A stretch of 64,000 nucleotides of DNA from Octopus sinensis (taxonomy: Eukaryota): assembly GCF_006345805.1 (NCBI RefSeq), contig NC_043010.1, forward strand, positions 13,578,001 to 13,642,000. The letters are read 5' to 3'. Below the pieces are notes generated by a model that was given only the letters and a program-made list of their open reading frames with translations, had not been told where the DNA came from and searched no databases. Made by a program: the position numbers and the translations under genes. Position 1 is the stretch's first letter. Every line of letters begins with the position of its first letter. Of this stretch, positions 4,020-61,154 are shown one piece after another.

Positions 4020-5100
4020 CTACTTGTACTAGCGGTGGTAGTCATCCGGGGTGAGTTGAGCCGGCTCCCACCGACGTGTTCACCCCGTCCCTCACGAATG
4101 CTCATCACATCCGACAGACAAATGCTTCACTGGGAGAGCAAGCGCGTCGGACAGCGCGAACGTCGTGGCCGTCATCATCATCATTGTTCGACCGTGGTCG
4201 AGACAATGGAATTTACCATGCTACGCCAGACTTCACGGTCCATCATGGCATTACGGAGGTCCTGTTGCTGGATGCCTATATCCCTGGAGATTACATCAGG
4301 GTAGGAGAGTGTGCAGCCTCTGGTGTCGCGACCGTGGTCGAGACAATGGAATTTACCATGCTACGCCAGACTTCATGGTCCATCATGGCATTACGGAGGT
4401 CCTGTTGCTGGATGCCTGTATCCCTGGAGATTACATCAGGGTAGGAGAGTGTGCACCCTCTGGTATCGCAAGTAGATGGCTTCCAGAGGAGAAGAGTAGA
4501 AATTACCTCTTTTTCAGCTCTACAACAATGTCCAGCAAACTGGACTCTCCTACCTTTCACAAGAGATGACACAGGTGGTAGTTTCCCATATATTTGCATT
4601 TTGGTTGGATGGCGCTTCCACGAGAGATTTTGAGCTCTCATAAGGAGGCGAGTATAGGTTCCATCCAACCGTCTCTCAAGCTTCTTTGATAACGTCCAGG
4701 TTTCTGAGCCATATAGTAGAATTGGTTCGACTATGGCTTTGAAGATTTTAAGTTTGAAATCTCCACTTAGATTTGATGACCAGATCTTATGCATGTGGCC
4801 GTAGTTGTCATTCGCTGTTGAGGTGTAGAGTTCATGTTCGGAATTTCAGCGGGAATACACGTTCACATGTTGTCCCTGGTCACATGTATACACACTTTGA
4901 GATTGTGTGATCCGTAGCAGCTCATCATGCTGTCGATTTTTGACCGTCGCAGAGGATTCGCTGACCAAGTCACTGCCAGTTATCGGAGCAGATGCAGCCT
5001 GGATTTGCAGCGAGTTCTAGAGACATGCTTTAACAAAAGCTAAGGAGTGCCTCACTCCCAGTTGTCTCCCAACCCGCCTGACACCAACCCGGAATTTCTG
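4020..5100 (-). mobile_element. Older RTE LINE 3' fragment, split by a nested LINE
   Basis: Joined halves read ..TPQQRM/NYGHDVRA..AFVRDGVNTSVGAGSTHPG*LPPLVQV; same 3' end type as the element at 45791. Confidence 0.7.
4173..4794 (-). mobile_element. 5'-truncated RTE/RTEX-like LINE with 8-bp TSD and internal 140-bp duplication
   Basis: ORF 4291-4794 KIFKAIVEPILLYGSETWTL..RRVQFAGHCCR; (ATG)n tail; TSD GTGGCCGT at 4165-4172 and 4795-4802. Confidence 0.9.
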
Positions 5101-9667: not shown

Positions 9668-10298
9668 GGCGGCGAACTGGCAGAAACGTTAGCACGCCAG
9701 GCGAAATGCGTAGCCGTATTTCGTCTGCCGCTACGTTCTGAGTTCAAATTCCGCCGAGGTCGACTTTGCCTTTCATCCTTTCGGCGTCGATAAATTAAGT
9801 AACAGTTACGCACTGGGGTCGATGTAATCGACTTAATTCGTTTATCTGTCCTTGTTTGTCTCCTCTGTGTTTAACCCCTTGTGGGTTGTAAAGAAATACG
9901 TATTTCGTCTGCTGTTATGTCCTGAGTTCAAATTCCGCCGAGGTCGACTTTGCCTTTCATCCTTTTGGGGTCGATAAATTAAGTACCAGTTATGCACTGG
10001 GGTCGATGTAATCGACTTAATCCGTTTGTCCGTTTCGTTTGTCCCTTCTGTGTGTAGCCCCTTGTGGGTAGTAAAGAAATAAGAAACGTTAGCACGCTGG
10101 GCGAAATGCGTAGCCGTGTTTCGTGTGCCGCTACGTTCTGAGTTCTAATTCCGCCGAGGTCGACTTTGCCTTTCATCCTTTCGGCGTCGATAAATTAAGT
10201 ACCAGTTACGCACTGGGGTCGATGTAATCGACTTAATTCGTTTGTCTGTCCTTGTTTGTCCCCTCTGTGTGTAGCCCCTTGTGGGTAATAAAGAAACA
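9668..10298 (+). mobile_element. SINE family B trimer
   Basis: Three GCCTTTCATCCTTTCGGxGTCGATAAATTAAGTAC bodies with AAAGAAAT tails; outer 18-bp TSD TATATTAAGCAGAGTGAA (9650-9667, 10299-10316). Confidence 0.95.
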
Positions 10299-10677
10299 TA
10301 TATTAAGCAGAGTGAAAGCTGATATTAATCAAATGAGTTGCGTATAGTTGATGGTGGACACAGAAAATGTGACATGTCGAAGAAAGCGATGTTGCCTCTA
10401 TGCCGTCAAATCCGTAACTGGTTTGAAACTGCCGCTTCGCTGTTGTAGTGAGTTTCTTCCATCTAGGGCAGATCACTACCGTTTTATTCATACGCCTCCA
10501 GCTCTGATTGGCTGGAATCTTCCACGGCACAACTGAACTATGCCACAGCAACAAAATAGATTTTTCCTGTCTCGCTACACTACCCCACTGCAGACTTTAA
10601 GTCGATACAAACAAGAAAAAGGAAGGATTAAAAAAATGTAAAGCAAAGGAAGTAAAAATAACAATACAAAATATTCC

Positions 10678-11087
10678 GGATCTTTTCGGTTTGAACGGCA
10701 GTTTTTTCTAGCGGTGTCATATGAAATTGTCACCCATAATTATGACCCTAGAATCGATCTATTGCATTTCAATCTCTTTTAAGGTTAGGGGTGGGGGAAG
10801 GGTATCTTTTTTTTGTTCACAAATGTAAATAAACCCAATCTGTTTCTTAAACGAGGGGCATATTCACACGGCACAGAATGCTTTTTACCTCAATAGACGT
10901 CATTGATTGGTTGAAATTGCAGAAATTGAAGAAAAAAACAACAAATATCTTACAAACTATAGAATTTTCTCAATAAAGCCAAGAGAAAAAGATGTTTTAT
11001 AAACACATTCTACCAGTATACGATGTTTAAAATTTTTTAGTTACCTAGAAATTATGTTAAAAACTGTCGTTCAAACCGAAAAGATCC
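10678..11087 (+). mobile_element. GGATCTTTT-TIR MITE
   Basis: TIRs; TSD AATATTCC. Confidence 0.95.
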
Positions 11088-14995: not shown

Positions 14996-15077
14996 AGTTT
15001 CGTGGCCGAGTGGTTAAGGCGATGGACTAGAAATCCAGTGGGGTCTCCCCGCATAGGTTCGAATCCTATCGGCGACG
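14996..15077 (+). tRNA. tRNA-Ser(AGA) gene or recent pseudogene
   Basis: 82 nt, near-identical to eukaryotic tRNA-Ser(AGA); anticodon 15029-15031, long variable arm, T-stem ATAGG/CCTAT intact, TTTT downstream; acceptor stem 5' strand mispaired, one anticodon-stem mismatch. Confidence 0.75.
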
Positions 15078-30694: not shown

Positions 30695-31110
30695 TACTCT
30701 CTTTACTCTTTTACTCTTTTACTTGTTTCAGTCATGTGACTGTGGCCATGCTGGAGCACCGCCTTTAGTCGAACAAATCGACCCAGGACTTATTCTTTGT
30801 AAGCCTAGTACTTAATCTATCGGTCTCTTTTTGCCAAACCGCTAAGTTACGGGGACGTAAACTCACCACCATCGGTTGTCAAGCGATGTTGGGGGGGACA
30901 AACAGATACACACACACATGCATATATATATATATATATAATATATACATATATACGACGGGCTTCTTTCAGTTTCCGTCTACCAAATCCACTGACAAGG
31001 CTTTAGTAGGCCGAGGCTATAGTAGAAGACACTTGCCCAAGGTGCCACACAGTGGGACTGAACCTGGAACCATGTGGTTGGTAAGCAAGCTACTTACCAC
31101 ACAGCCATTC
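30695..31110 (-). mobile_element. SINE family A
   Basis: Full-length, (TACTCTTT)n tail. Confidence 0.95.
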
Positions 31111-31329
31111 CTGCTTGTTTCAAAAGTATTTGCTTCAAGTTTATCTTCTCTAAAAACTTCTTCTTTCAGATTTTTGTTTGAAAAGTATTTTCATTCCTCA
31201 ACACCAAATTCCTAAACTAGTGAATTGGTTGATTGCTGTTTTCATTGAGGCTTTTTGTGCTCATCCTTTCCAGATCAATATTTTTTTTAACATTCAGATT
31301 ACTCTGTCAAATGTAATATTTATTTATTC

Positions 31330-31759: not shown

Positions 31760-32182
31760 CTCTTTTTACTCTTTTACTCTTTTACTTGTTTCAGTCATTT
31801 GACTGCGGCCATGCTGGAGCACCACCTTTAGTTGAGCAAATCGACCCCGGGACTTATACTTTGTAAGCCCAGTACTTATTCTATCGGTCTCTTTTGCCGA
31901 ACCGCTAAGTGACAGGGATGTAAACATACCAGCATCGGTTGTCAAGCAATGCTGGGGGGACAAACACAGACACACAAACATATACACACACACTTATATA
32001 TATATATATACATATATACGACAGGCTTCTTTCAGTTTCCGTCTACCAAATCCACTCACAAGGCATTGGTCGGCCTGTGGCTATAGTAGAAGCCACTTGC
32101 CCAACGTGCCACGCAGTGGGACTGAACCCGGAACCATGTGGTTGGTTAGCAAGCTACTTACCACACAGCCACTCCTGCGCCT
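31760..32182 (-). mobile_element. SINE family A
   Basis: Full-length. Confidence 0.95.
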
Positions 32183-34005
32183 AGCATAGTATAGTATAAA
32201 ACATCAATCTTCAGCTTTTGTAAAGTAGAGGGTTCCACTGACAATTCTCTAATTGGGCTCTGCACTTCCTAGCACTGACTATTGCATTTATACATCAATG
32301 ACAAAATTGATATGACTTCATGTTCCTACTATTAATCTGAAGGTCAAGGTTACTCATATATGGCACTGCAGTCATGAGTAAAAATGTTAATATATTCCAA
32401 ACCAAAGTTGTTTTAAGTAGCATTTGCCTTGTTATTATCAGTCTCATGTTTTTACAATGAAGTAAAAAATCAAAAATTCATATTTTCATTTTATATTTTT
32501 GAAAAATGATGTTTGTTTAAAATTATTTCAATTAATTTAATGTTATATTTACATTTAAATATTTTTTCTTTATGCTGCAGGTTTACCAAAATTTCCCAGA
32601 ACACCTGAAATTACTCTTTTATAGAATACTGAATACCTATATTTGTTCACGTTGATTGAGAAATTACTATTTTCACCAAGGAAAATGTCTTACAATAAAG
32701 GAGAGTTTATTCTTTGAAATATAAAATTAAATTCTTATCTGTGATTCAAAACATGAAAAACTTCCCTTAATTTTGTATATTTATGAAATATATATATTTC
32801 TTCAAAGAACTGATGTTAAATCTTAATGATAATTTTGATGCACAAGAAATCAGATTTTTGTCTCTTTAGCTAACATCAATCACTTTCAGAATACAACACG
32901 GAATGAATAAGTTCTGTTTAAGATATATTCTTTTTCATAAACCTAACAAAATCTTTGTTAATTTCTCTTTGCCTTCTATTATTTTCCACATGAAAAAAAA
33001 GCAAACTATGACTTTGCTATATGACTTCAACTATAACGAGATTGCTGCTCTTTCATAATATTTCTAAATTTATGATACCCATTCTGTTGTTAAAAATAGA
33101 CAAATTATATGGCTTCCACTCAACAGACAAAAGAAATTTTCAACCACCATGATGTACTCATTAACATGCATTGTTTAGGCAGAGAAGCTCTAAACAACTG
33201 CATTTCTATATCAAAGCAAATAGGGTTCGGTATTATTGACCGGTTAGAGTTCCGTAACTTTTTTCATTCAAACTTTAGCATTGATTACAAACAATGTTTA
33301 AATAGTGGTCAAATTTTATCTTTTAATACAAAATATTTGAATGGGTTCAGAAAATACAACTTCCCACTGTTATTGATTGAATCTTTAACAAATATAGAGA
33401 AAAAACATAGGATATGCCTAGAATCATAAAAAAAAATGTTTTAATCATATTTGTAAGAAATAAATAAAATAACTTTGAGTGCCATGAGGAGAGATGAGTT
33501 GTAATTGCATTCATACTATTTAGTAGCTAAGATATATATAACATAAATACTAATGCTAAATGGTATGGTCTTGTTTTAGATTGGTGTTGATTGTTATTGG
33601 TTTTGTGAGCTAATTTAAAAATATATAACATTAAAATAATGATAATCTTCAAAAGCAAAATGTTTTTATATTCCCTGTTGTATTTAGAATTTTATTGTAG
33701 ATTATAAAACACATAAAATTGGTTATATAGATTAGCAAGCTAACGGTACTTTAACTAGTGTCCACCAACATCATCTTTCAAAATATCAAAAAATACAAAA
33801 TTATAAAAAAAAAAACATACAATACAGGATTGAAAAACAAAGAAGCAAGCAGTAAATCTATCTCGTTGTGTTTTACTGCAAAGAGAAATATTTCCTGGAA
33901 CGGAAGCTTGAAGGTGGAATTAATTTCAAAAGATTTGATTCTGTTATTTTCACAAGATATGATTCCAATGCGTAAATCTTCTATAATATGTGTCCCAAAC
34001 ATTAA

Positions 34006-34998: not shown

Positions 34999-36342
34999 AT
35001 GTATTCTGTCCAATCAATGTACGGCAGCATGGGAAGTCAGTTCAATTTTGATTTCTGTCCTCCCACGATGGGCTCACCAAATAACCACCAGATTGGAAAA
35101 TACTCACTCACCCCTAATAATCATAACTTTTGCAACAAACGGACTTACAAAGGGGATAAACCCTACCGATGTGATATTTGTCGGAAAGGCTTCTGTCGAC
35201 GCAGCAACCTCAGTAACCATGAACGGTCTTCAGCATATGAAAAACACTTCTATTGTATGTATTGTAGGAAGGCCTTCTCTCAGCGTGCTCATCTGAAAAC
35301 CCACGAAATCACCCATACGGGGCTTAAACCTTATTCGTGTGAATTCTGCTCAAAAACATTTGCCCAACGTGCCAACTTTGATAACCACCGACGCACACAT
35401 ACAGGTGAACGGCCCTACCACTGCAGCTGGTGCTCAAAAGCTTTTGCTCAGTTGACAAACCTAAACAATCATGTACGGATTCATACTGGAGAACGGCCTT
35501 TTGTGTGTTCAATGTGTTCCAAGGCATTTAGCCAAGTTACAAACTTACGTAATCACGAACGTATCCACACAGGTGAAAAACCCTTCGTGTGCATATTTTG
35601 TGCAAAAGCATTCAGTCAAGTAACACACCTTCGAAATCATGAACGTGTTCACACTGGTGAAAAACCCTACACATGTTCCACTTGTTCTAAAGCTTTCAGT
35701 CAACGTGCTAATCTGGATAATCACAAACGTATTCATACCGGTGAAAAACCATTTGTCTGTTCAGTGTGTAAGAAATCCTTCTCACAAGTTACAAATTTAC
35801 GGAACCATGAACGCATCCATGCAGCATCAGGCAATGCCCCTTTGAACAAAAACAGCACCACCGCTAACAAAACCAACAATTACTACCCTGATGCAGATGG
35901 CAACAATAATAGTTACCGGAAACATTATAACAACCAACAATCTCAGCACCATCCCATAAAACACCATCCACAAATCCAGAATCCAAATTCATCGCCAGAT
36001 GTCCAGGCTAGCACGTCCCCTACTGATCTCAATGTTCGAAATATGCCCCAACAACAGCAACTCCCACCACCACCACCACTACCATCACTACCCCCTTCTT
36101 CTGCTACTGCCATTCGTCCCCAGCCAATAACCATCCCAAATTGGATGACTCCGCCCTCCTATGTACAACAAATCACTCCATCTTGGGAAAATAGTTACAA
36201 CTGGTCATCTCGAAATTTCCCAATTGCTTCATCCCGGTGGAATTCCAGTAGCTCACAAAACATTCCTAGTCTGCTGCCCTGTGGCATTGGCCAAACCAAC
36301 CATAGTATTGATTTAGATCCAAAACTGTATCAAAGAACCTAA
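34999..36342 (+). CDS. C2H2 zinc-finger protein, 447 aa: 7 canonical + 1 degenerate finger, Q/P/S/N-rich C-terminus, no KRAB/SCAN/BTB seen
   Basis: Uninterrupted ORF with tandem CxxC-x12-HxxxH and TGE(K/R)P linkers; upstream in-frame stops support this ATG; ATTAAA at 36404. Confidence 0.95.
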   Translation: MYSVQSMYGSMGSQFNFDFCPPTMGSPNNHQIGKYSLTPNNHNFCNKRTYKGDKPYRCDICRKGFCRRSNLSNHERSSAYEKHFYCMYCRKAFSQRAHLKTHEITHTGLKPYSCEFCSKTFAQRANFDNHRRTHTGERPYHCSWCSKAFAQLTNLNNHVRIHTGERPFVCSMCSKAFSQVTNLRNHERIHTGEKPFVCIFCAKAFSQVTHLRNHERVHTGEKPYTCSTCSKAFSQRANLDNHKRIHTGEKPFVCSVCKKSFSQVTNLRNHERIHAASGNAPLNKNSTTANKTNNYYPDADGNNNSYRKHYNNQQSQHHPIKHHPQIQNPNSSPDVQASTSPTDLNVRNMPQQQQLPPPPPLPSLPPSSATAIRPQPITIPNWMTPPSYVQQITPSWENSYNWSSRNFPIASSRWNSSSSQNIPSLLPCGIGQTNHSIDLDPKLYQRT

Positions 36343-37919: not shown

Positions 37920-38084
37920 TAAACAATGAAGCAAAATAAGATCATAGACCTAATACCAAATTTTTTAATCTTAATACAATTAAATCCATGAATTAATGCA
38001 ATGTAAAAACTTCCAAGAGAGGAATCGATTTTATGCCAAATGTTAGCCAATCAGATAAAAAGAAATTGTTGTGTTTCAGGATTA

Positions 38085-38505
38085 CTCTCTTTACTCTTTT
38101 ACTTGTTTCAGTCATTTGACTGTGGGCCATGCTGGAGCACCGCCTTTAATCGAGCAAATCGACCACAGGACTTATTCTTTGAAAGCCTAGTACTTATTCT
38201 ATCGATCTCTTTTGCCGAACCACTAAGTGACGGGGACGTAAACACACCAGCATCGGTTGTCAAGCGATGTTGGTTGTGGGGGGGACAAATACAGACACAC
38301 AAACATATACACACACACATACATATATATGTATACCTATATACAACAGGCTTCTTTCAGTTTCCGTCTACAAAATCCACTCACAAGGCTTTGGTCGGCC
38401 CGAGGCTATAATAGAAGACACTTGCCCAAGGTGCCACGCGGTGGGACTGAACCTGGAACCATGTGGTTAGTAAGCAAGCTACTTACCACACAGCCACTCC
38501 TATGC
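38085..38505 (-). mobile_element. SINE family A
   Basis: Full-length. Confidence 0.95.
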
Positions 38506-38747
38506 CTGGTCATTTTTTTTTTCCTTTTGCCAAATAAATAAATGCACTATATATTCATTCTTCACAACAGATTTATTTTATTATTGTTCTTATTTTATGT
38601 CCTCTATATATATATAAATCTGAAGTGAAGCATGAATAAATGGCAGTGCCCCAGCATGGCCACAGCTTGTGAGCTGAAACTAGATAAAAATAAAAAATAT
38701 AAAATAAAATGCACTGTGTGTGTGTCTTTTTTTTGTTTTTTTTTGGC

Positions 38748-43984: not shown

Positions 43985-44415
43985 TTTCTCTCTTTTACTT
44001 GTTTTAGTGATTTGACTGCAGCCATGCTGGAGCACCGCCTTTAGTCAAGCAAATCGAACCCGGGACTTATTCTTTGTAAGCCTAGTACTTAGTCTATCGG
44101 TCTCTTTTGCCGAACCACTAAGTTACGGGGACGTAAACACACCAGCATCGGTTGTCAAGTGATGTTGGGGGGACAAACAGACACACATACACACACACAA
44201 ACACATACACACACACATACACATATATATATATATATATATACATATATACGACGGGCTTCTTTCAGTTTCCGGTCTACCAAATCCACTCACAAGGATT
44301 CGGTCGGCTCGAGGCTATAGTAGAAGACACTTGCCCAAGGTGCCACGCAGTGGGACTGAACCCGGAACCATGTGGTTGGTAAGCAAGCTACTTACCACAC
44401 AGCCATTCCTGCGCC
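43985..44415 (-). mobile_element. SINE family A
   Basis: Full-length. Confidence 0.95.
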
Positions 44416-44713
44416 TGTACATATCAAAGTATTCTTTCACTCTGTTATAGCATTTGCTTGAGCAGTCATAGAAGTCAAGCATGGATCCATGGTCCATCCC
44501 TGATTATGATATTCTTAAGTTCAAATACATTAGTTCTAGATTCTTCTTTGACGATTTGGTGCAATGCTTCTTATTTTTCAAGAGTTGGTATCATAGACAT
44601 CTAGCAACCATAAACAGTGTTGTCACGTTCAAACAAATTCTCATACAGAACAGATTAACCGATAATCTATGATTTTCTTCTATTTATTTATTGTAATATT
44701 TATTTTGTCCGTT

Positions 44714-45490: not shown

Positions 45491-45790
45491 ATCACAACTC
45501 TTCATTGTGATTTTTTTTGTTTTTTTTGTGAGATTTTTTTTTAATAGTCAAAGGAGGATAATCAATAGCAATAGCCATGTTGTAGAGCCTTCAAGAATAG
45601 CAGAAAGAAATGGGTCATCCTGAAGCTAGACATCTGTCAGAGTGCTTATAACAGAGTGAATCCTATTAAAGGTAGCCAAGGGCCTAGTGAGGTGTTCAAC
45701 CACACGAGTATACTGAGTTCTGGTCAACGACACAACCACACTGCATTCTTGGCCTCATCAGTGATAGCTGGCTATTTATGAAGTTATGTA

Positions 45791-46293
45791 CTTGTACTTG
45801 TACTTGTGGCGACATTCACCCTGGGCGGGTTGAGTCAGCTTCTTCTACCACCCTCGAGGCATCTTTGAACCATGGCAGCCCACGCACGACGGCTCTGCGC
45901 CAGTTCACTGGAGATAGCAAGCCAGTCACAGTTCCATCGGCGCAGACCGACCATTGTATTCGCCATTGAGAATTCATGGAAGAAGTTTCGTGGGAATATG
46001 ATTTTCACAAGCAGTCCCCAACAATCCCGAATGTAGAGACATCCTGTTTGCCGCAGATTGTTCGCAGATGCAGGGACAAAACGACCGAGGAGCCGCCGGT
46101 TGCCGAAACAGACACTCAGAGGATTTTTCACCAGAGCCCCGTTTACCGGGTTGTGGCCCTAATACCACTCGGTGTCAGACCAATCCGCCTTGGGTGGCCC
46201 TACCAGGAACCGAAGTTCCTGACGGCATAGCTCTGACACTACCCGTTGCCAGCGTCCCCACCACGGTGAGGAGGGAATGGACTTTGGGGACGC
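45791..46293 (-). mobile_element. Short internally deleted RTE derivative (503 bp) with 13-bp TSD
   Basis: TSD ATGAAGTTATGTA (45778-45790, 46294-46306); 3' part VGLRRWNCDWLAISSELAQSRRAWAAMV.. plus (CAAGTA)n tail; no RT/EN. Confidence 0.85.
46178..46293 (-). ncRNA. Candidate HDV-like self-cleaving ribozyme
   Basis: P1 GCGUCCCC/GGGGACGC, P3-L3 (U)CC-UCACCGU-GG(U), P1.1 CA/UG, GCAA, P4 with CAGGAAC-UUCG-GUUCCUG, imperfect P2. Confidence 0.65.
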
Positions 46294-46777
46294 ATGAAGT
46301 TATGTAAAACTACTTGACAAATTTTTGCTTCTTAACTCTAGAATAAGAAGTGGATTGATCATGTTACACGTTGCTCTTGCAATACTGAATCTATCAGTGA
46401 AAGTGTAATGTATTTTATCTCTGCTGTTTGTAATTCTGTAGTACAATTGTGATCATGGTTTCTGCGTCCACATGTATCTGAAATAATATGAATAATATAT
46501 ATACGCAAACATGATTTAATATTTTAGTACACATAAATCAATACTGTAAGAGCTCTATATTTCACTTAAGACTTTCATAAATATATATATATATATATAT
46601 ATAGTACAAAGTAAGATAGGGGTTATGAATATAACCCACTATGGGATATCAATTATCCAATATACAGTTGGTAAAGTACCCAAATTCTTAGTACATAAAT
46701 GCTTTTAATTGCAATACAATTAATTCAAATACTGTATTAAATGGGTGAAGGTAAAAAAATATTTTTACTGTAAGTTC

Positions 46778-47475: not shown

Positions 47476-48385
47476 AATAATAGTAATAATAATAATGAAA
47501 TTATTGTAAACAGTGCTCAGGTGCACCACAACTTGTCAAACAGTGCGTATAAAGTATATGCAGTAATGTACAAATGTCTGGAAAGCGAACAGTGTATGAG
47601 TCAGATACATGCTTGTGTGTGTATGGAGGGGAGAAAATCAGGTGTAGTGTTGGCGAATCTCAGGAAGCATGGAAGTTTTGAAGGATGCAGTGCTCCGACA
47701 CTAACAACTGATGCCGGCAGTTTGTTCCATGCTTCAGCGTGTGTATGGAGGGGAGAACATCAGGTGTAGTGTTGGCGAATCTCAGGAAGCATGGAAGTTT
47801 TGAAGGATGTAGTGCTCCGACAACTAACAACTGATGCCGGCAGATTGTTCCATGCTTCAGCGTGTGTATGGAGGGGAGAAAATCAGGTGTAGTGTTGGCG
47901 AATCTCAGGAAGCATGGAAGTTTTGAAGGATGTAGTGCTCCGACAACTAACAACTGATGCCGGCAGTTTGTTCCATGCTTCAGCGTGTGTATGGAGGGGA
48001 GAAAATCAGGTGTAGTGTTGGCGAATCTCAGGAAGCATGGAAGTTTTGAAGGATGCAGTGCTCCGACACTAACAACTGATGCCGGCAGTTTGTTCCATGC
48101 TTCAGCGTGTGTATGGAGGGGAGAAAATCAGGTGTAGTGTTGGCGAATCTCAGAAAGCATGGAAGTTTTGAAGGATGCAGTGCTCCGACAACTAACAACT
48201 GATGCCGGCAGTTTGTTCCATGCTTCAACAACTCTAAGTGCAAACAAATGTTTCTGAAAGTCATGGGAGCTGTGCTGTTTTCTGACTTTGTAAACCTGTC
48301 CACAGGTGTTAGACAGGTGGAGTTTGAAAAGGTGCTCAGAGTTATTGTTTGTAAGATGGTTAATAATTTTATGGGTGTATATGCA
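47476..48385 (-). mobile_element. CR1-clade LINE 3' end containing 5 tandem ~123-bp copies
   Basis: KIINHLTNNNSEHLFKLHLSNTCGQVYKVRK..FALRVVEAWNKLPASVVSCRSTASFKTSML; (ATT)n tail; repeat 47617-48228. Confidence 0.9.
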
Positions 48386-58195: not shown

Positions 58196-58271
58196 GTATA
58201 ATGCATGTGTGTGCATATTTCTTTATTTATTACAAAGACATCTCTTTTAGAGGATGGTCTTGACAGTTAGT

Positions 58272-58428
58272 ATAGGAGTGGCTGTGTGGTAAGTAGCTTG
58301 CTTATGAACCACATGGTTCAGGGTTCAGTCCCACTGCGTGGCACCTTGGGCAAGTGTCTTCTACTATAGCCTCGGGCTGACCAAAGCCTTGTGAGTGGAT
58401 TTGGTAGACAGAAACTGAAAGAAGCCTG

Positions 58429-58467
<39 letters not shown>

Positions 58468-61154
58468 TGTATGTGTGTATGTATATGTTTGTCCCCCTGA
58501 CATCACTTGACAACCGATGCTGGTGTGTTTATGTCCCCGTAACTTAGCGGTTTGGCAAAAGACACCGATAGGATACGTACTGGGCTTACAAAGAATAAGT
58601 CCTGGGGGTGATTTGCTCGACTAAAGGCAGTGCTCCAGCATGGCCACAGTCAAATGACTGAAAGAAGTACAAGAGTAAAAGAGTAACGGTTGAAATAAAG
58701 CATATCTGCAGAATTTGAACTCACAAATTAGAGAGAAAAAACTGAACAACATAATATATTTCGTATGCATTCTACTCCCTCAGCTTTCTCTACTACCTTA
58801 CAATTAGAATGTGCAAAAATGAACAGGAGTGGCTGTGTGGTAAGTAGCTTGTTTACCAACCACATGGTTCCGGGTTCAGTCCCACTGCATGGCACCTTGG
58901 GCAAGTGTCTTCTGCTATAGCATCGGGCCGACCAATGCCTTGTGAGTGGATTTGGTAGATGGAAACTGAAAGAAGCCTGTTGTATATATGTACATATATA
59001 TATGTGTGTGTGTGTCTGTGTGTCTGTGTTTGTCCCCCTAGCATTGCTTGACAACCGATGCTGGTGTGTTTATATCCCCGTTACTTAGCGGTTCGGCAAA
59101 AGAGACCGATAGAATAAGTACTGGGCTTACAAAAGAATAAGTCCCGGGGTCGAGTTGCTCGATTAAAGACGGTGTTCCAGCATGGCCGCAGTCAAATGAC
59201 TGAAACAAGTAAAAGAGTAAAAGAGAGCAAAGAGAGAAAATAAACAGAAAGAGAAATGTCATCATAGAGCCAGTGAAAACAGAACAAGCATGCCTTGGTT
59301 AAAACCAAAAATACATTAAGAAAATTCCTGCATCTCTGCTGTATTTCTCATGTTGAGTATAACCTTCTAATTTGATGTAATTTAATTAAGATAATTTCTT
59401 TTTATCACTTTTCATCATCTTCAATAGTTTACTGTCGTTTTTTTTTTGTTGTTTTTTGCATCCAGTGAGCAGCTGTTTTACTTACTAAGAATTCCATTTG
59501 CTGCGGTGAAATACTGACATGGATATTTTACACCAATTCCCTAAGACTCTCAGAGACAATATTTGTTTTATAATTTCTTTCATCATAAATTAGACAACCG
59601 ATTTATTTTAGAACTAGTTAACTCCAGGGAATATATATTTTAACGCCCTTATACTTTTAATATTCATTTCTGCCATTGGCACAAAGCCAGCTATTTTCAG
59701 GGAAGGGTATAATCAATTAAATCAGCCCCTGTAACCCTGTACACTAACTGGTATTTATTCATTTAATATTGGCAGAGCATCGTGCAAAATGACTTGCAGT
59801 ATTAAATTACATTTACTCTTTACTCTTTTACTTGTTTCAGTCATTTGACTGCGGCCATGCTGGAGCAACGCCTTTAGTCGAGCAAATCAACCCCGGGACT
59901 TATTCTTTGTAAGCCCAGTACTTATTCTAGTGGTCTCTTTTGCCGAACCGCTAAGTGACAGGGACATAAACACACCAGCATCGGTTGTCAAGCAATGCTA
60001 GGGGGACAAACACAGACACACAAACACACACACACATATATATATACATATATATGACGGGTTTCTTTCAGTTTCTTTCTCCCAAATCCACTTACAAGGC
60101 TTTGATTGGCCTGGGGCTATAGTAGAAGACACTTGCTCAAGATGCCACGCAGTGGGACTGAACCCGGAACCATGTGGTTGGTAAACAAGCTACTTACCAC
60201 ACAGCCTACATTTTCAGTTCAAATCTTACTCAAACCAACCTTGCTTTTCAGAATTCCAAAGTTAATTAGTAGACATGTAGCTGTGTCGTAAGAAGCTTGC
60301 CTCCAAACCACATGGTTCCAGGTTCACTCCCACTGCATGAGAGCTTGGGCAAGTGCCTATTACTATAGCCCCAGGCCAATCAAAGCTTGTAAGTGGATTT
60401 GGGAGAAAGAAACTGAAAGAAGCCTGTCTTATATATATATATATGTATGCATGTGTGTGTGCATGTGTGTGTGTGTGTGTGGTGTATTTACATCTTGTAA
60501 CTTAGCAGTTCGGCAAAAGTACCTGATAGAATAAGTACCAGGCTTGAAGTCTAAGTGCTGGGGTCGATTCATTCAACTAAAAGTTGGTGACGTCCCAGCA
60601 TGGCCACAGTCTAATGACTGGAACAAATAAAATATAAAATAAACAGAATGTAATGAGCAAAACCCAAACCCAAACCCCTAATTAGAGGTTATATGAACAT
60701 ATGTTAATAATTATAATCATTATCAGTTTTAGCTCCCTTTTCCATGCTTGCTTGAATCAGACAGAATTTATTAAGGCAGGTTAGCTACAGTTGAATATCC
60801 TTACCATTGCTAATGCTCACCTGTTTCCAAGCAAAGTAATATTTTCTTATGGCCACGCATGTTTTCTTTTATGGAAAACAGATAATGAACAACATTGCTT
60901 GTATGACAGTGAAGCTTGTTTACAACCATCAGGCAATGTCAAGACATGAGTGCATGCACACACGCACAGACATGCACACACACACACACACATACACACA
61001 CGTGGCGATTTTTTTTCCTCTGTCTTCCCTTCTCTGGATCATTCCTTCTCCTATGTTTCCGACGAAGAGCTCCTTCTTTCCTGAGCGTCCAATAATACTA
61101 TATTTGTTCCACGTCCTCGCGTTGCTGTGTTTTTTTGTGCTTTCTTGTTTGGAT

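What the first reader, a model, noticed from the sequence alone, without database searches (positions are those of the whole stretch)
45791..46293. Ribozyme-capped mini-retroelement: 503-bp RTE derivative whose 5' end is exactly the predicted HDV-like cleavage site
Seen: a 13-bp TSD (ATGAAGTTATGTA) brackets the element. On the minus strand it begins at G46293, the first base of a perfect 8-bp helix GCGUCCCC/GGGGACGC. The 3' strand of that helix follows (U)CC-UCACCGU-GG(U) and is followed by UG (can pair with L3 CA as P1.1) and GCAAC. Further on are a perfect CAGGAAC-UUCG-GUUCCUG hairpin and a C-rich ACCCAAGGCGGAUUGGUC segment that partly pairs back (P2, 7/9 bp). The 3' part is an RTE ORF2 end with a (CAAGTA)n tail; there is no RT/endonuclease and no Pol III box. 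Known: HDV-like ribozymes define the 5' ends of R2, RTE and ingi/L1Tc elements (L1Tc P3-L3 is, from memory, ACC-UCAACGU-GGU), and R2 spawns short internally deleted elements (SIDEs). Inference: a promoterless non-autonomous RTE-SIDE released from host transcripts by self-cleavage and mobilised in trans. I do not know of this being described in cephalopods. P2/P3 carry mismatches and the catalytic-C register is ambiguous, so this copy may be inactive.
Basis: partly seen in the sequence, partly recalled or inferred. Interest (0 to 1): 0.85.

Follow-up and report, generated by a model that had tools for sequence, protein, structure and literature searches.

The report
Short octopus retroelement with ribozyme-like cap
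A 503-bp dead copy of a short, non-coding jumping element in the octopus genome carries the tail of an RTE retrotransposon and, at its first base, a conserved RNA module that looks like a hepatitis-delta-type self-cutting ribozyme; this design is known from other animals and parasites but has not been reported in cephalopods.

Summary
Window 45791-46293 (minus strand, Octopus sinensis) is a 503-bp insertion between two exact 13-bp target-site duplications. It begins with a perfect 8-bp helix and ends in a (CAAGTA)n tail.

- **RTE origin:** only the last ~160 nt are demonstrably RTE ORF2-derived. There is no RT or endonuclease, no tRNA and no Pol III boxes.
- **Second copy:** a 578-bp TSD-flanked mini-element from another genome (L008) shares the first ~120 nt at 75-78% identity. 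It starts within 1-2 nt of the same position. Its deletion junction is different.
- **Ribozyme support:** the best Rfam match is a sub-threshold HDV-like model (16.2 vs 44 bits). Its model position 1 falls exactly on G46293. P1 shows two compensatory changes. L3, P1.1 and GCAAC match HDV-type cores.
- **Ribozyme doubts:** P3 is imperfect. L008 lacks that segment, and a conserved 8-bp helix (nt 55-62/115-122) cuts across it.
- **Copy number:** family size and the autonomous partner could not be tested, because no cephalopod genome was searchable.

Verdict: interpretation partly supported. This is a new member of a known kind (ribozyme-capped SIDE/NARTc-like elements). Interest is moderate.

The parts
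46294..46306 (.). Target-site duplication, copy at the element's 5' end (ATGAAGTTATGTA on + strand)
   Evidence: Exact 13-mer found only twice in the window.
45778..45790 (.). Target-site duplication, copy at the element's 3' end. Its two element-proximal bases (+ strand TA at 45789-45790) could belong to the CAAGTA tail, so the TSD is 11-13 bp.
45791..46293 (-). Whole 503-bp non-autonomous retroposon copy. It is 55% G+C in a 38% G+C window.
46171..46293 (-). Conserved 5'-terminal module (element nt 1-123), the candidate HDV-like ribozyme
   Evidence: 78% identity to L008 over nt 6-86 and 75% over 103 aligned positions up to nt 123. Rfam RF02682 sub-threshold hit at 46232-46293.
46286..46293 (-). 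P1 5' strand GCGUCCCC (nt 1-8). The predicted cleavage site is 5' of G46293.
   Evidence: Perfect 8 bp with nt 35-42. Two compensatory changes in L008.
46252..46259 (-). P1 3' strand GGGGACGC (nt 35-42)
46260..46272 (-). P3/L3: U22xU34, C23-G33, C24-G32, with the 7-nt loop UCACCGU
   Evidence: It aligns to the CCUCUaCGUGG core of RF02682. P3 is broken in L008.
46245..46251 (-). UG (P1.1 partner of L3 C26-A27) followed by GCAAC (J1.1/4)
   Evidence: Identical in L008. It matches GGCAAC of the RF02682 consensus.
46232..46239 (-). 5' strand GUGUCAGA (nt 55-62) of the conserved long-range helix, the candidate true P4
   Evidence: Perfect 8 bp with nt 115-122, and part of the MFE fold. L008 keeps 8 of 8 pairs with U-A changed to C-G and G-C changed to G.U.
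46172..46179 (-). 3' strand UCUGACAC (nt 115-122) of the conserved long-range helix
46204..46221 (-). Hairpin CAGGAAC-UUCG-GUUCCUG (nt 73-90). Its 3' half is absent in L008.
46178..46191 (-). This assignment is doubtful.
   Evidence: 7 of 9 pairs in this copy. In L008 nt 83-108 are missing and only 4 of 9 pairs remain.
46165..46170 (-). Alternative P2 3' strand GAGUGG (nt 124-129), pairing with CCAUUC (nt 14-19), directly after C123
   Evidence: It is the only uninterrupted P2 of 6 bp or more found by the descriptor scan. In-register support in L008 is 3 of 6 pairs.
45955..46164 (-). Middle region (nt 130-339) of unknown origin, possibly the rest of an RTE 5' UTR
   Evidence: No ORF2 homology with profile HMMs in any frame. 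No significant alignment to L008. No other copy in the window.
45795..45954 (-). RTE ORF2 C-terminal remnant (about 53 codons, one frameshift, one stop)
45791..45806 (-). (CAAGTA)n microsatellite tail
   Evidence: The same QVQV-coding tail ends related RTE ORF2s such as P0131, P0133 and P0142.

Best explanation
This is an inactive, TSD-flanked copy of a short non-autonomous retroposon built from two functional ends of an RTE-type LINE.

- **3' end:** the last ~160 nt plus the (CAAGTA)n tail are what the RTE reverse transcriptase recognises for target-primed reverse transcription.
- **5' end:** the first ~120 nt are the lineage's conserved 5'-terminal module. In active source copies, this module most likely folds into an HDV-like self-cleaving ribozyme.

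**Proposed mechanism.** The element has no promoter. It is transcribed as part of a longer host or read-through transcript. The ribozyme cuts immediately 5' of the first P1 nucleotide (G46293). The released RNA is copied into a new site by an RTE enzyme supplied in trans, which creates the 11-13 bp duplication.

**Shown here**
- The element's boundaries and TSD.
- RTE tail homology.
- Lack of coding capacity.
- Conservation of the 5' module and of its terminus in a second genome.
- HDV-like core signature: P1, L3, P1.1 and GCAAC.

**Inferred**
- Self-cleavage.
- Co-transcription with host sequence.
- Trans-mobilisation as a short RNA.

**Fold of the 3' half.** It is unresolved. I favour P4 = nt 55-62/115-122, with the catalytic C and P2 just downstream (C123; nt 124-129).

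**Activity of this copy.** It may well be inactive, because P3 has a U.U mismatch next to only two C-G pairs.
For: **Boundaries.** Exact 13-bp TSD abutting both ends.

**RTE tail.** Only nt 340-499 match RTE ORF2 C-termini: profile E = 3e-14 plus 2e-4 across a frameshift; 69-72% DNA identity to six RTE 3' ends. Related ORF2s also read into a QVQV/(CAAGTA)n tail.

**Second copy.** Locus L008 (ENA ERZ21867824) lies between its own 13-bp TSDs at 10120-10132 and 10711-10723.
- It is a 578-bp element whose nt 100-578 are 87-91% identical to RTE 3' ends of that genome.
- Its first ~97 nt align to this element's nt 1-123 at 75-78% identity.
- It starts 1-2 nt from the homologous position.
- That genome lacks the abundant SINE of the window, so it is a different taxon.

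**Rfam.** In a scan of 4227 families, the top structural hit at the 5' end is the HDV-like ribozyme RF02682, model positions 1-74, beginning exactly at G46293. E = 2.2 over 701 nt and 0.45 over 141 nt. Sequence agrees with the model in L3/P3 (CCUCaCCGUGG) and GGCAAC.

**Base-pair evidence.**
- P1.1: the L3 bases CA pair with UG here, where the RF02682 consensus has CU pairing with AG. Both bases are identical in L008.
- P1 keeps pairing in L008 with G-C changed to C-G and C-G changed to U-A.
- The helix nt 55-62/115-122 keeps 8 of 8 pairs with one compensatory change.

**Shuffle control.** A relaxed HDV descriptor starts exactly at nt 1 in only 32 (5' half) or 23 (full) of 20000 dinucleotide shuffles of nt 1-260.

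**Sampling argument.** Of 7 RTE 3' ends sampled without regard to their 5' side, one is a mini-element with the module and none is full length. This argues that short forms are at least as common as full-length ones.

**Literature.** HDV-like ribozymes at RTE and Baggins 5' ends and in non-autonomous derivatives are established (PMC6765202, PMC4035085, PMC3774820). Variable 5' junctions are described where cleavage is at the element's own 5' end (PMC3774820).
Against: - The Rfam score is 16.2 bits against a gathering score of 44. No HDV family passes its threshold. L008 gives no HDV hit at all.
- P3 has a U.U mismatch here and is broken in L008, where 1 of 4 positions pairs.
- No threading gives a canonical J4/2. 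My alternative leaves a 10-nt J1.1/4 and a 1-nt J4/2.
- The structural descriptor alone is unspecific: about 45 loci for the 5' half and about 22 for the full descriptor per 128 kb of the window.
- Covariation rests on two sequences and a hand-made alignment.
- In L008, P1 begins 1-2 nt inside the element.
- No further copy of the 5' module was found in about 237 kb of cephalopod-like DNA held.
- No full-length RTE with this 5' end was seen, so 'family' and 'trans-mobilised' are unproven.
Confidence: 0.5

Rival explanations
1. The element is the same kind of retroposon, but the conserved 5' module is not a ribozyme. It is a structured RTE 5'-UTR element: a terminal stem plus the long-range helix nt 55-62/115-122. 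It would serve another purpose, such as an internal promoter or defined transcription start, a binding site for the element's protein, or translation control. On this view the resemblance to HDV cores is a coincidence of a G+C-rich hairpin.
For: - The Rfam hit is far below threshold, and L008 gives none.
- P3 is poor in both copies.
- HDV-like descriptors at this stringency are common in the window.
- A defined 5' end can also come from a transcription start. Pr77 of L1Tc acts both as promoter and as ribozyme (PMC4035085).
Against: - The first nucleotide of the element is exactly the first nucleotide of P1 and of the HDV model. This happens in about 0.1-0.2% of shuffles.
- L3, P1.1 and GCAAC match HDV-type cores at the sequence level and are conserved in L008.
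- RTE elements are described as promoterless and ribozyme-processed in other animals (PMC6765202).
- No promoter evidence was obtained here.
Confidence: 0.27
2. This is not a propagating short element. A full-length RTE inserted here, and most of it was later lost by an internal DNA deletion at this locus. Alternatively, the reverse transcriptase skipped from the 3' region to the 5' end of a full-length RNA during this one insertion. The 503-bp structure would then be a one-off.
For: - The element is single copy in the window, and no other copy was found in any DNA held.
- The two known mini-elements have different internal junctions, as expected for independent accidents.
- In L008 the retained ORF2 part is still an open frame and is 87-91% identical to ordinary copies, consistent with a recent deletion.
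Against: - Such accidents should be rarer than full-length copies. Yet 1 of 7 unbiased RTE 3' ends is a mini-element and none is full length.
- A random 64-kb window also contains one mini-element.
- Both arguments rest on very small numbers. The octopus genome itself could not be searched.
Confidence: 0.25
3. It is an ordinary 5'-truncated RTE copy, or a twin-priming copy with an inverted 5' part. The whole 503 bp would be ORF2-derived, the 5' end arbitrary, and the ribozyme look accidental.
For: - 5' truncation is the commonest fate of LINE copies. All other RTE copies examined are 5'-truncated at 480-990 bp.
- 5'-inverted RTE segments exist in L007 and L017.
- A weak antisense blastx similarity of nt 20-163 to another RTE family was seen (E = 0.04).
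Against: - Profile HMMs of both RTE families match only nt 340-499. They find nothing in any of the six frames upstream, all E > 1.
- DNA similarity to RTE copies stops at nt ~342.
- The first ~120 nt are shared with L008, where they are joined to a different ORF2 position and are absent from ordinary copies.
Confidence: 0.03

Closest known systems
[quoted passage not shown] 2011, as reviewed in PMC6765202; R2 survey in PMC3774820)
   Same: - Promoterless LINE lineage.
- The ribozyme-type fold begins at the element's first nucleotide.
- P1 is followed by P3/L3, P1.1 and a GCAAC-like junction.
- P4 is variable, and P2 mismatches are tolerated.
- The 5' junction can vary by a few nucleotides when cleavage is at the element's own end.
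   Different: - No Rfam HDV family reaches threshold.
- P3 is imperfect.
- J4/2 and the catalytic C cannot be placed canonically.
- Activity is untested.
- No cephalopod or mollusc RTE example was found in the searchable literature.
R2 SIDEs (short internally deleted elements; Eickbush & Eickbush 2012, cited in PMC6765202)
   Same: - A 5' ribozyme end joined to a 3' end of the parent LINE.
- No ORF.
- Presumed mobilisation by the parent's protein.
   Different: - R2 and its SIDEs are site-specific in 28S rDNA and are cleaved from the rRNA co-transcript.
- This element has an APE-type, dispersed, TSD-making insertion and an RTE tail.
- A multi-copy family is not shown here.
NARTc/RIME and SIDER elements of trypanosomatids, with the Pr77 hallmark (PMC4035085)
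   Same: - Short non-autonomous derivatives share the first ~77 nt (an HDV-like ribozyme) and the 3' end of an autonomous LINE.
- They are dispersed in the genome.
- Many copies carry decayed, inactive ribozymes.
- Downstream sequence can switch the fold. This parallels the competing helix nt 55-62/115-122 seen here.
   Different: - They belong to the ingi/L1Tc clade, not to RTE, and occur in protists.
- Pr77 is also a proven promoter.
- Cleavage has been shown in vitro for those elements and not for this one.
LINE-tailed SINEs mobilised through a shared 3' end (for example the eel UnaSINE1/UnaL2 system; Kajikawa & Okada 2002, cited in PMC8501958) and the hammerhead-bearing schistosome SINE-like repeats (Ferbeyre et al. 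1998, cited in PMC6765202)
   Same: - Head, body and LINE-derived tail architecture.
- Dependence on the partner LINE's recognition of the 3' end.
- The schistosome repeats also carry a ribozyme.
   Different: - Classical SINEs have a Pol III head (tRNA, 5S or 7SL). None is present here.
- The schistosome ribozyme is a hammerhead.

Membership tests
Rfam HDV-like ribozyme families (RF02682 HDV-F-prausnitzii; also RF00094, RF00622, RF01787, RF01788) | Covariance-model score at or above the family's gathering threshold | tested here: not met
   The best hit is RF02682 at 16.2 bits against a threshold of 44. The gathering-threshold scan of the window found only a tRNA. No other HDV family appears at E <= 10. 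L008 gives no HDV hit.
HDV-like self-cleaving ribozyme (structural class) | P1 of about 6-7 bp whose first nucleotide is the cleavage site, with its 3' strand immediately downstream of P3/L3 (PMC4908430, PMC3774820) | tested here: met
   GCGUCCCC/GGGGACGC pairs at nt 1-8/35-42, directly after UCC-UCACCGU-GGU, and nt 1 is the TSD-defined element start. Two compensatory changes occur in L008, where the helix starts 1-2 nt inside the element.
HDV-like self-cleaving ribozyme (structural class) | A 3-bp P3 closing a ~7-8 nt L3, and a 1-2 bp P1.1 between L3 and the nucleotides after P1 | tested here: inconclusive
   L3 (UCACCGU) and P1.1 (C26-G44, A27-U43) fit and are conserved. P3 has only 2 Watson-Crick pairs plus a U.U mismatch here and is broken in L008.
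HDV-like self-cleaving ribozyme (structural class) | P4, then J4/2 with the catalytic C, then a P2 3' strand pairing with the segment just 5' of P3 (nested double pseudoknot) | tested here: inconclusive
   Two threadings are possible.
- **Model A (reader):** P4 at nt 50-53/99-102, C107, P2 at nt 12-20/108-116 with 7 of 9 pairs. L008 lacks nt 83-108.
- **Model B:** P4 at nt 55-62/115-122 (covarying), C123, P2 at nt 14-19/124-129 with 6 bp, but an atypical 10-nt J1.1/4 and a 1-nt J4/2.

HDV-like self-cleaving ribozyme (structural class) | Mg2+-dependent site-specific self-scission abolished by mutating the catalytic C | not testable with these tools
   This needs in vitro transcription and cleavage assays.
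RTE-clade non-LTR retrotransposon derivative | 3' end homologous to an RTE ORF2 C-terminus that runs into a short-unit microsatellite tail | tested here: met
   - Nt 340-499 match the ORF2 C-terminal profile.
- DNA identity to RTE-like 3' ends is 69-72%.
- The (CAAGTA)n tail is shared with related ORF2 ends.
- Octopus RTE-2_OV likewise has a microsatellite starting at the ORF end (PMC9115989).

Clade placement of the partner by RT phylogeny was not done, and Pfam gave no domain for these C-terminal fragments.
SIDE / NARTc-type non-autonomous element | 5' end and 3' end of an autonomous LINE joined, with the coding region missing | tested here: inconclusive
   The 3' end criterion is met. In L008 the 5' module is joined to RTE ORF2 sequence, which links the module to that RTE lineage. 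No full-length RTE carrying the module was recovered.
SIDE / NARTc-type non-autonomous element | Multiple dispersed copies sharing the same internal junction, as evidence of propagation as a short element | not testable with these tools
   No cephalopod genome collection was searchable by DNA. The element is single copy in the window. Pattern scans of JGI metagenomes, IMG/VR and GTDB genomes gave only chance bacterial hits or none.
Pol III SINE | tRNA-, 5S- or 7SL-derived head with A and B boxes | tested here: not met
   No tRNA was found. There is no tRNA, 5S or 7SL Rfam hit at E <= 10. The best box matches have 2-3 mismatches, at non-homologous and wrongly spaced positions in the two copies.

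The most novel reading that the evidence does not exclude
A cephalopod RTE lineage and its short parasites use a conserved but atypically organised HDV-like ribozyme. P4 would be formed by the covarying long-range helix nt 55-62/115-122, with an extended J1.1/4 and a minimal J4/2. This ribozyme may toggle with an alternative fold.

Such a ribozyme would explain how promoterless RTE RNAs with exact 5' ends are carved out of host transcripts. That would tie the reported neuron-specific RTE expression in octopus to host-gene transcription. It would also add a new structural variant to the HDV-like class.
Probability: 0.25. Interest if true: 0.6.

Novelty: new member of a known kind. Interest (0 to 1): 0.45.

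Why it matters
Octopus genomes are rich in LINEs and SINEs. RTE elements are reported to be transcribed, and possibly mobile, in the octopus brain (PMC9115989, PMC13282606). How their RNAs obtain defined 5' ends has not been addressed in that literature.

A ribozyme cap would have three consequences:
- RTE expression would be driven by the host transcripts the copies sit in.
- It would give a simple sequence signature for finding retrotransposition-competent copies and their non-autonomous parasites.
- It would extend the RTE/HDV-ribozyme association to molluscs.

If the 3' half really uses the conserved long-range helix, the element also offers a natural variant for studying how peripheral domains and alternative folds tune HDV-like ribozymes. 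The principle itself, ribozyme-capped LINEs and their internally deleted derivatives, is already established in insects and trypanosomatids. This is therefore an extension of that principle.

Tried and rejected
1. **Other copies in the window.** blastn with word size 7 found only the element itself plus a 46-nt tail similarity to another RTE fragment at 4021-4066.
2. **Word-indexed protein search with the 107-aa frame.** No hits. The exact-protein look-up of the 98-aa ORF is not on record.
3. **First RTE family tried (window 4291-4794).** It gave 368 relatives and three loci, but neither protein nor DNA is related to the mini-element beyond the tail.
4. **Pattern scans for the conserved core.**
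   - JGI metagenomes gave 8 G+C-rich bacterial chance hits.
   - IMG/VR gave none.
   - GTDB genomes gave none.
5. **Covariance model from the two 5' modules.** It was searched over about 237 kb held and returned only self hits.
6. **Simple 5'-truncated RTE copy.** Rejected by profile HMMs.
7. **Inverted (twin-priming) ORF2 origin of the 5' part.** This was suggested by a weak antisense blastx hit and rejected by profile HMMs of both RTE families in six frames.
8. **Collinearity of the middle region with L008's ORF2 part.** The Smith-Waterman score is no better than shuffles; 123 of 300 shuffles scored as high.
9. **Pol III SINE head.** No tRNA and no boxes.
10. **Generic HDV structural descriptor as a specificity test.** It is too permissive on its own, with about 45 loci for the 5' half and about 22 for the full descriptor per 128 kb. 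It was used only for the positional-coincidence control.
11. **Ruminski et al. 2011 (PMC3308841).** The paper is not held, so RTE ribozyme sequences could not be compared directly.
Full report
**Source and observation**

An exact-protein look-up of the zinc-finger ORF at 34999-36342 places the window in assembly GCA_006345805.1, record CM016872.1. From memory, this accession is Octopus sinensis, the species named in PMC13282606.

- The 13-mer ATGAAGTTATGTA occurs exactly twice, at 45778-45790 and 46294-46306.
- Between the two copies, read on the minus strand, lies a 503-bp segment of 55% G+C in a 38% G+C window.
- It starts with GCGUCCCC (nt 1-8), which pairs perfectly with GGGGACGC (nt 35-42).
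- That helix encloses UCC-UCACCGU-GGU and is followed by UG and GCAAC.
- Further on come a cUUCGg-capped 7-bp hairpin (nt 73-90) and GGAUUGGUC, which can pair 7 of 9 with nt 12-20.
- The element ends in CAAGTACAAGTACAAG.
- Because the TSD begins with TA on the minus strand, it is 11-13 bp long.

**What the 3' part is**

The 107-aa frame had no word-indexed relatives. An exhaustive HMMER search found a family of ORF2 C-termini matching residues 65-100 at 54-69% identity.

- A profile of that family matches the element only at nt 340-429 (E = 3e-14). After one frameshift it also matches nt 428-499 (E = 2e-4).
- DNA identity to six RTE-like 3' ends from ENA assembly ERZ21867824 is 69-72% over the same 160 nt and stops at nt ~342.
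- These ORF2s read straight into a QVQV-coding (CAAGTA)n tail. This matches the description of octopus RTE-2_OV, whose microsatellite begins at the ORF end (PMC9115989).

The RTE ORF2 end is therefore real, but it covers 160 nt only. Nt ~125-340 have no detectable ORF2 homology in any of six frames and no other copy in the window. They may be the remainder of an RTE 5' UTR. No RT, endonuclease, tRNA or ordered Pol III boxes are present.

**The key comparative result**

One protein from the second search, P0136, reads 'GRWQRVVPELCRRELRLIWHP' directly before ORF2 sequence. The octopus element encodes 'GRWQRVVSELCRQELRFLVGP' in frame 1 of its 5' end.

- Its locus L008 holds a 578-bp element (10133-10710) between exact 13-bp duplications, AACGGTACATATT.
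- Nt 100-578 of that element are 87-91% identical to ordinary RTE 3' ends of that genome.
- Its first ~97 nt are absent from those copies. They align to nt 1-123 of the octopus element at 75-78% identity.
- That genome lacks the SINE that litters the window, so it is a different taxon.

Two independent insertions in two genomes thus carry the same 5' module, and it starts within 1-2 nt of the same position. The module is joined to the RTE 3' region at different internal points. This rules out random 5' truncation and shows that the module is the defined 5' terminus of this RTE lineage or of its derivatives.

**Is the module an HDV-like ribozyme?**

*Evidence for:*
- Among 4227 Rfam families, the best structural match at the 5' end is the HDV-like ribozyme RF02682. 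Model position 1 falls on G46293. The match agrees in P1, in CCUCaCCGUGG (P3/L3) and in GGCAAC.
- E is 2.2 for 701 nt against all families. By my arithmetic that is about 5e-4 expected hits for this one family, before requiring the exact start position.
- P1.1 is formed by CA/UG here, where the model consensus has CU/AG.
- In L008, P1 keeps pairing with G-C changed to C-G and C-G changed to U-A. UG-GCAAC and L3 (UCAACGU) are conserved.
- A permissive structural descriptor starts exactly at nt 1 in only 0.1-0.2% of dinucleotide shuffles.

*Evidence against:*
- The score is 16.2 bits against a gathering score of 44, and L008 gives no HDV hit.
- P3 is C-G, C-G plus a U.U mismatch here and is broken in L008.
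- The same descriptor hits about 45 loci (5' half) or about 22 loci (full descriptor) in the window, so structure alone is weak evidence.

**The 3' half**

That assignment is a P4 outer stem at nt 50-53/99-102, J4/2 AAGGC with C107, and P2 at nt 108-116.

- L008 lacks nt 83-108, and only 4 of 9 of those P2 pairs remain in it.
- A perfect 8-bp helix instead joins nt 55-62 (GUGUCAGA) to nt 115-122 (UCUGACAC). It is part of the MFE fold.
- L008 keeps this helix 8 of 8, as GUGCCAGA/UUUGGCAC, with one compensatory change and one G.U pair.
- The 26-nt indel between the two copies lies inside this helix, as expected for a variable P4.
- If this helix is P4, the catalytic C and P2 would follow it: C123, then GAGUGG pairing with CCAUUC at nt 14-19. 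That is the only uninterrupted 6-bp P2 the descriptor found.

That model has an unusually long J1.1/4 (10 nt) and a 1-nt J4/2. Alternatively, the helix is a competing fold, as described for sequences downstream of the L1Tc ribozyme (PMC4035085). With two decayed copies this cannot be settled.

**Family or one-off?**

No cephalopod genome could be searched by DNA. Scans of JGI metagenomes, IMG/VR and GTDB with the conserved core gave only chance hits or none. A covariance model of the module found nothing more in about 237 kb held.

Of seven RTE 3' ends sampled without regard to their 5' side, one is a mini-element with the module and none is full length. This makes in-situ deletion of rare full-length copies the less likely origin. 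The numbers are tiny, and the two junctions differ. Recurrent formation, for example by template skipping during reverse transcription, remains possible.

**Mechanism proposed**

- Transcription within a host or read-through transcript (inferred).
- Self-cleavage 5' of G1 by the HDV-like module in active source copies (inferred from signature and position).
- Recognition of the 160-nt tail and microsatellite by an RTE reverse transcriptase supplied in trans (inferred from the shared 3' end).
- Target-primed reverse transcription producing the 11-13 bp TSD (shown).

The 1-2 nt offset at the L008 5' junction fits the variable junctions reported when cleavage is at the element's own end (PMC3774820).

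**Comparison with known systems, and verdict**

[quoted passage not shown] So are their short derivatives: R2 SIDEs, NARTc/RIME and SIDERs (PMC6765202, PMC4035085, PMC3774820). Full-text searches found no paper combining 'HDV-like', 'ribozyme' and 'octopus'. The only two papers combining 'HDV-like ribozyme' with 'mollus' are an R2 distribution survey and a ribozyme review.

The finding is therefore a plausible new member of a known kind. Interest is 0.45.

Noticed in passing
window 4020-4850 (minus strand): A 5'-truncated copy of a different RTE-like family, with a 167-aa ORF at 4291-4794 and 368 relatives, some carrying RVT_1. It contains an internal tandem duplication of ~130-150 bp (about 4172-4326 repeating about 4329-4480). 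It ends in a GTACAAGTAGTAAG tail that resembles the mini-element's last 46 nt (74% identity).
   Followed up: partly
window 30700-31115, 31765-32186, 38082-38528, 43990-44416, 58266-58686 and many more: An abundant ~440-bp interspersed repeat with 86-90% identity between copies. It gave 56 blast pieces in 64 kb, counting the query's own 5.3-kb self-match. Its translated form recurs in many listed ORFs ('...RHLPKVPRSGTEPGTMWLVSKLLTTQP'). It is probably the major octopus SINE. It is absent from the ERZ21867824/ERZ25072740/ERZ26222911 loci.
   Followed up: partly
window 15001-15071 (+): The only Rfam hit above threshold in the window is a tRNA-like sequence (40.3 bits, model positions 6-65). It may be a SINE head rather than a tRNA gene.
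   Followed up: no
window 34999-36342 (+): An intact single-exon 447-aa C2H2 zinc-finger ORF with about 8 fingers and a Q/P/N-rich tail. It was used to identify the source assembly.
   Followed up: partly
window 47660-48303 (minus strand): Tandemly repeated ORF segments ('HPSKLPCFLRFANTTPDFLPSIHTLKHGTNCRHQLLV' several times) indicate a minisatellite of ~110-120 bp units about 1.4 kb from the mini-element.
   Followed up: no
L017 9396-9991 versus L007 9344-9904; L007 9281-9700 (minus strand, RVT_1): In two loci the 5'-truncated RTE 3' end is preceded by an RTE segment in inverted orientation (83% identity between loci). This is the pattern expected from twin priming.
   Followed up: no
L006 9806-10000: The RTE copy abuts an RT motif 0-2 segment ('NYQPIALT...GFRNKRSLIDHL') that looks like a CR1/jockey-type LINE. 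This suggests either a nested insertion or an internally deleted RT.
   Followed up: no
L005, L006, L007, L017, L018, L019: For these ERZ21867824 loci the tool reports that the called gene does not translate to the query, and the given gene coordinates contain a stop. This suggests a small coordinate offset in the stored gene calls for that assembly. The DNA itself aligned as expected.
   Followed up: no
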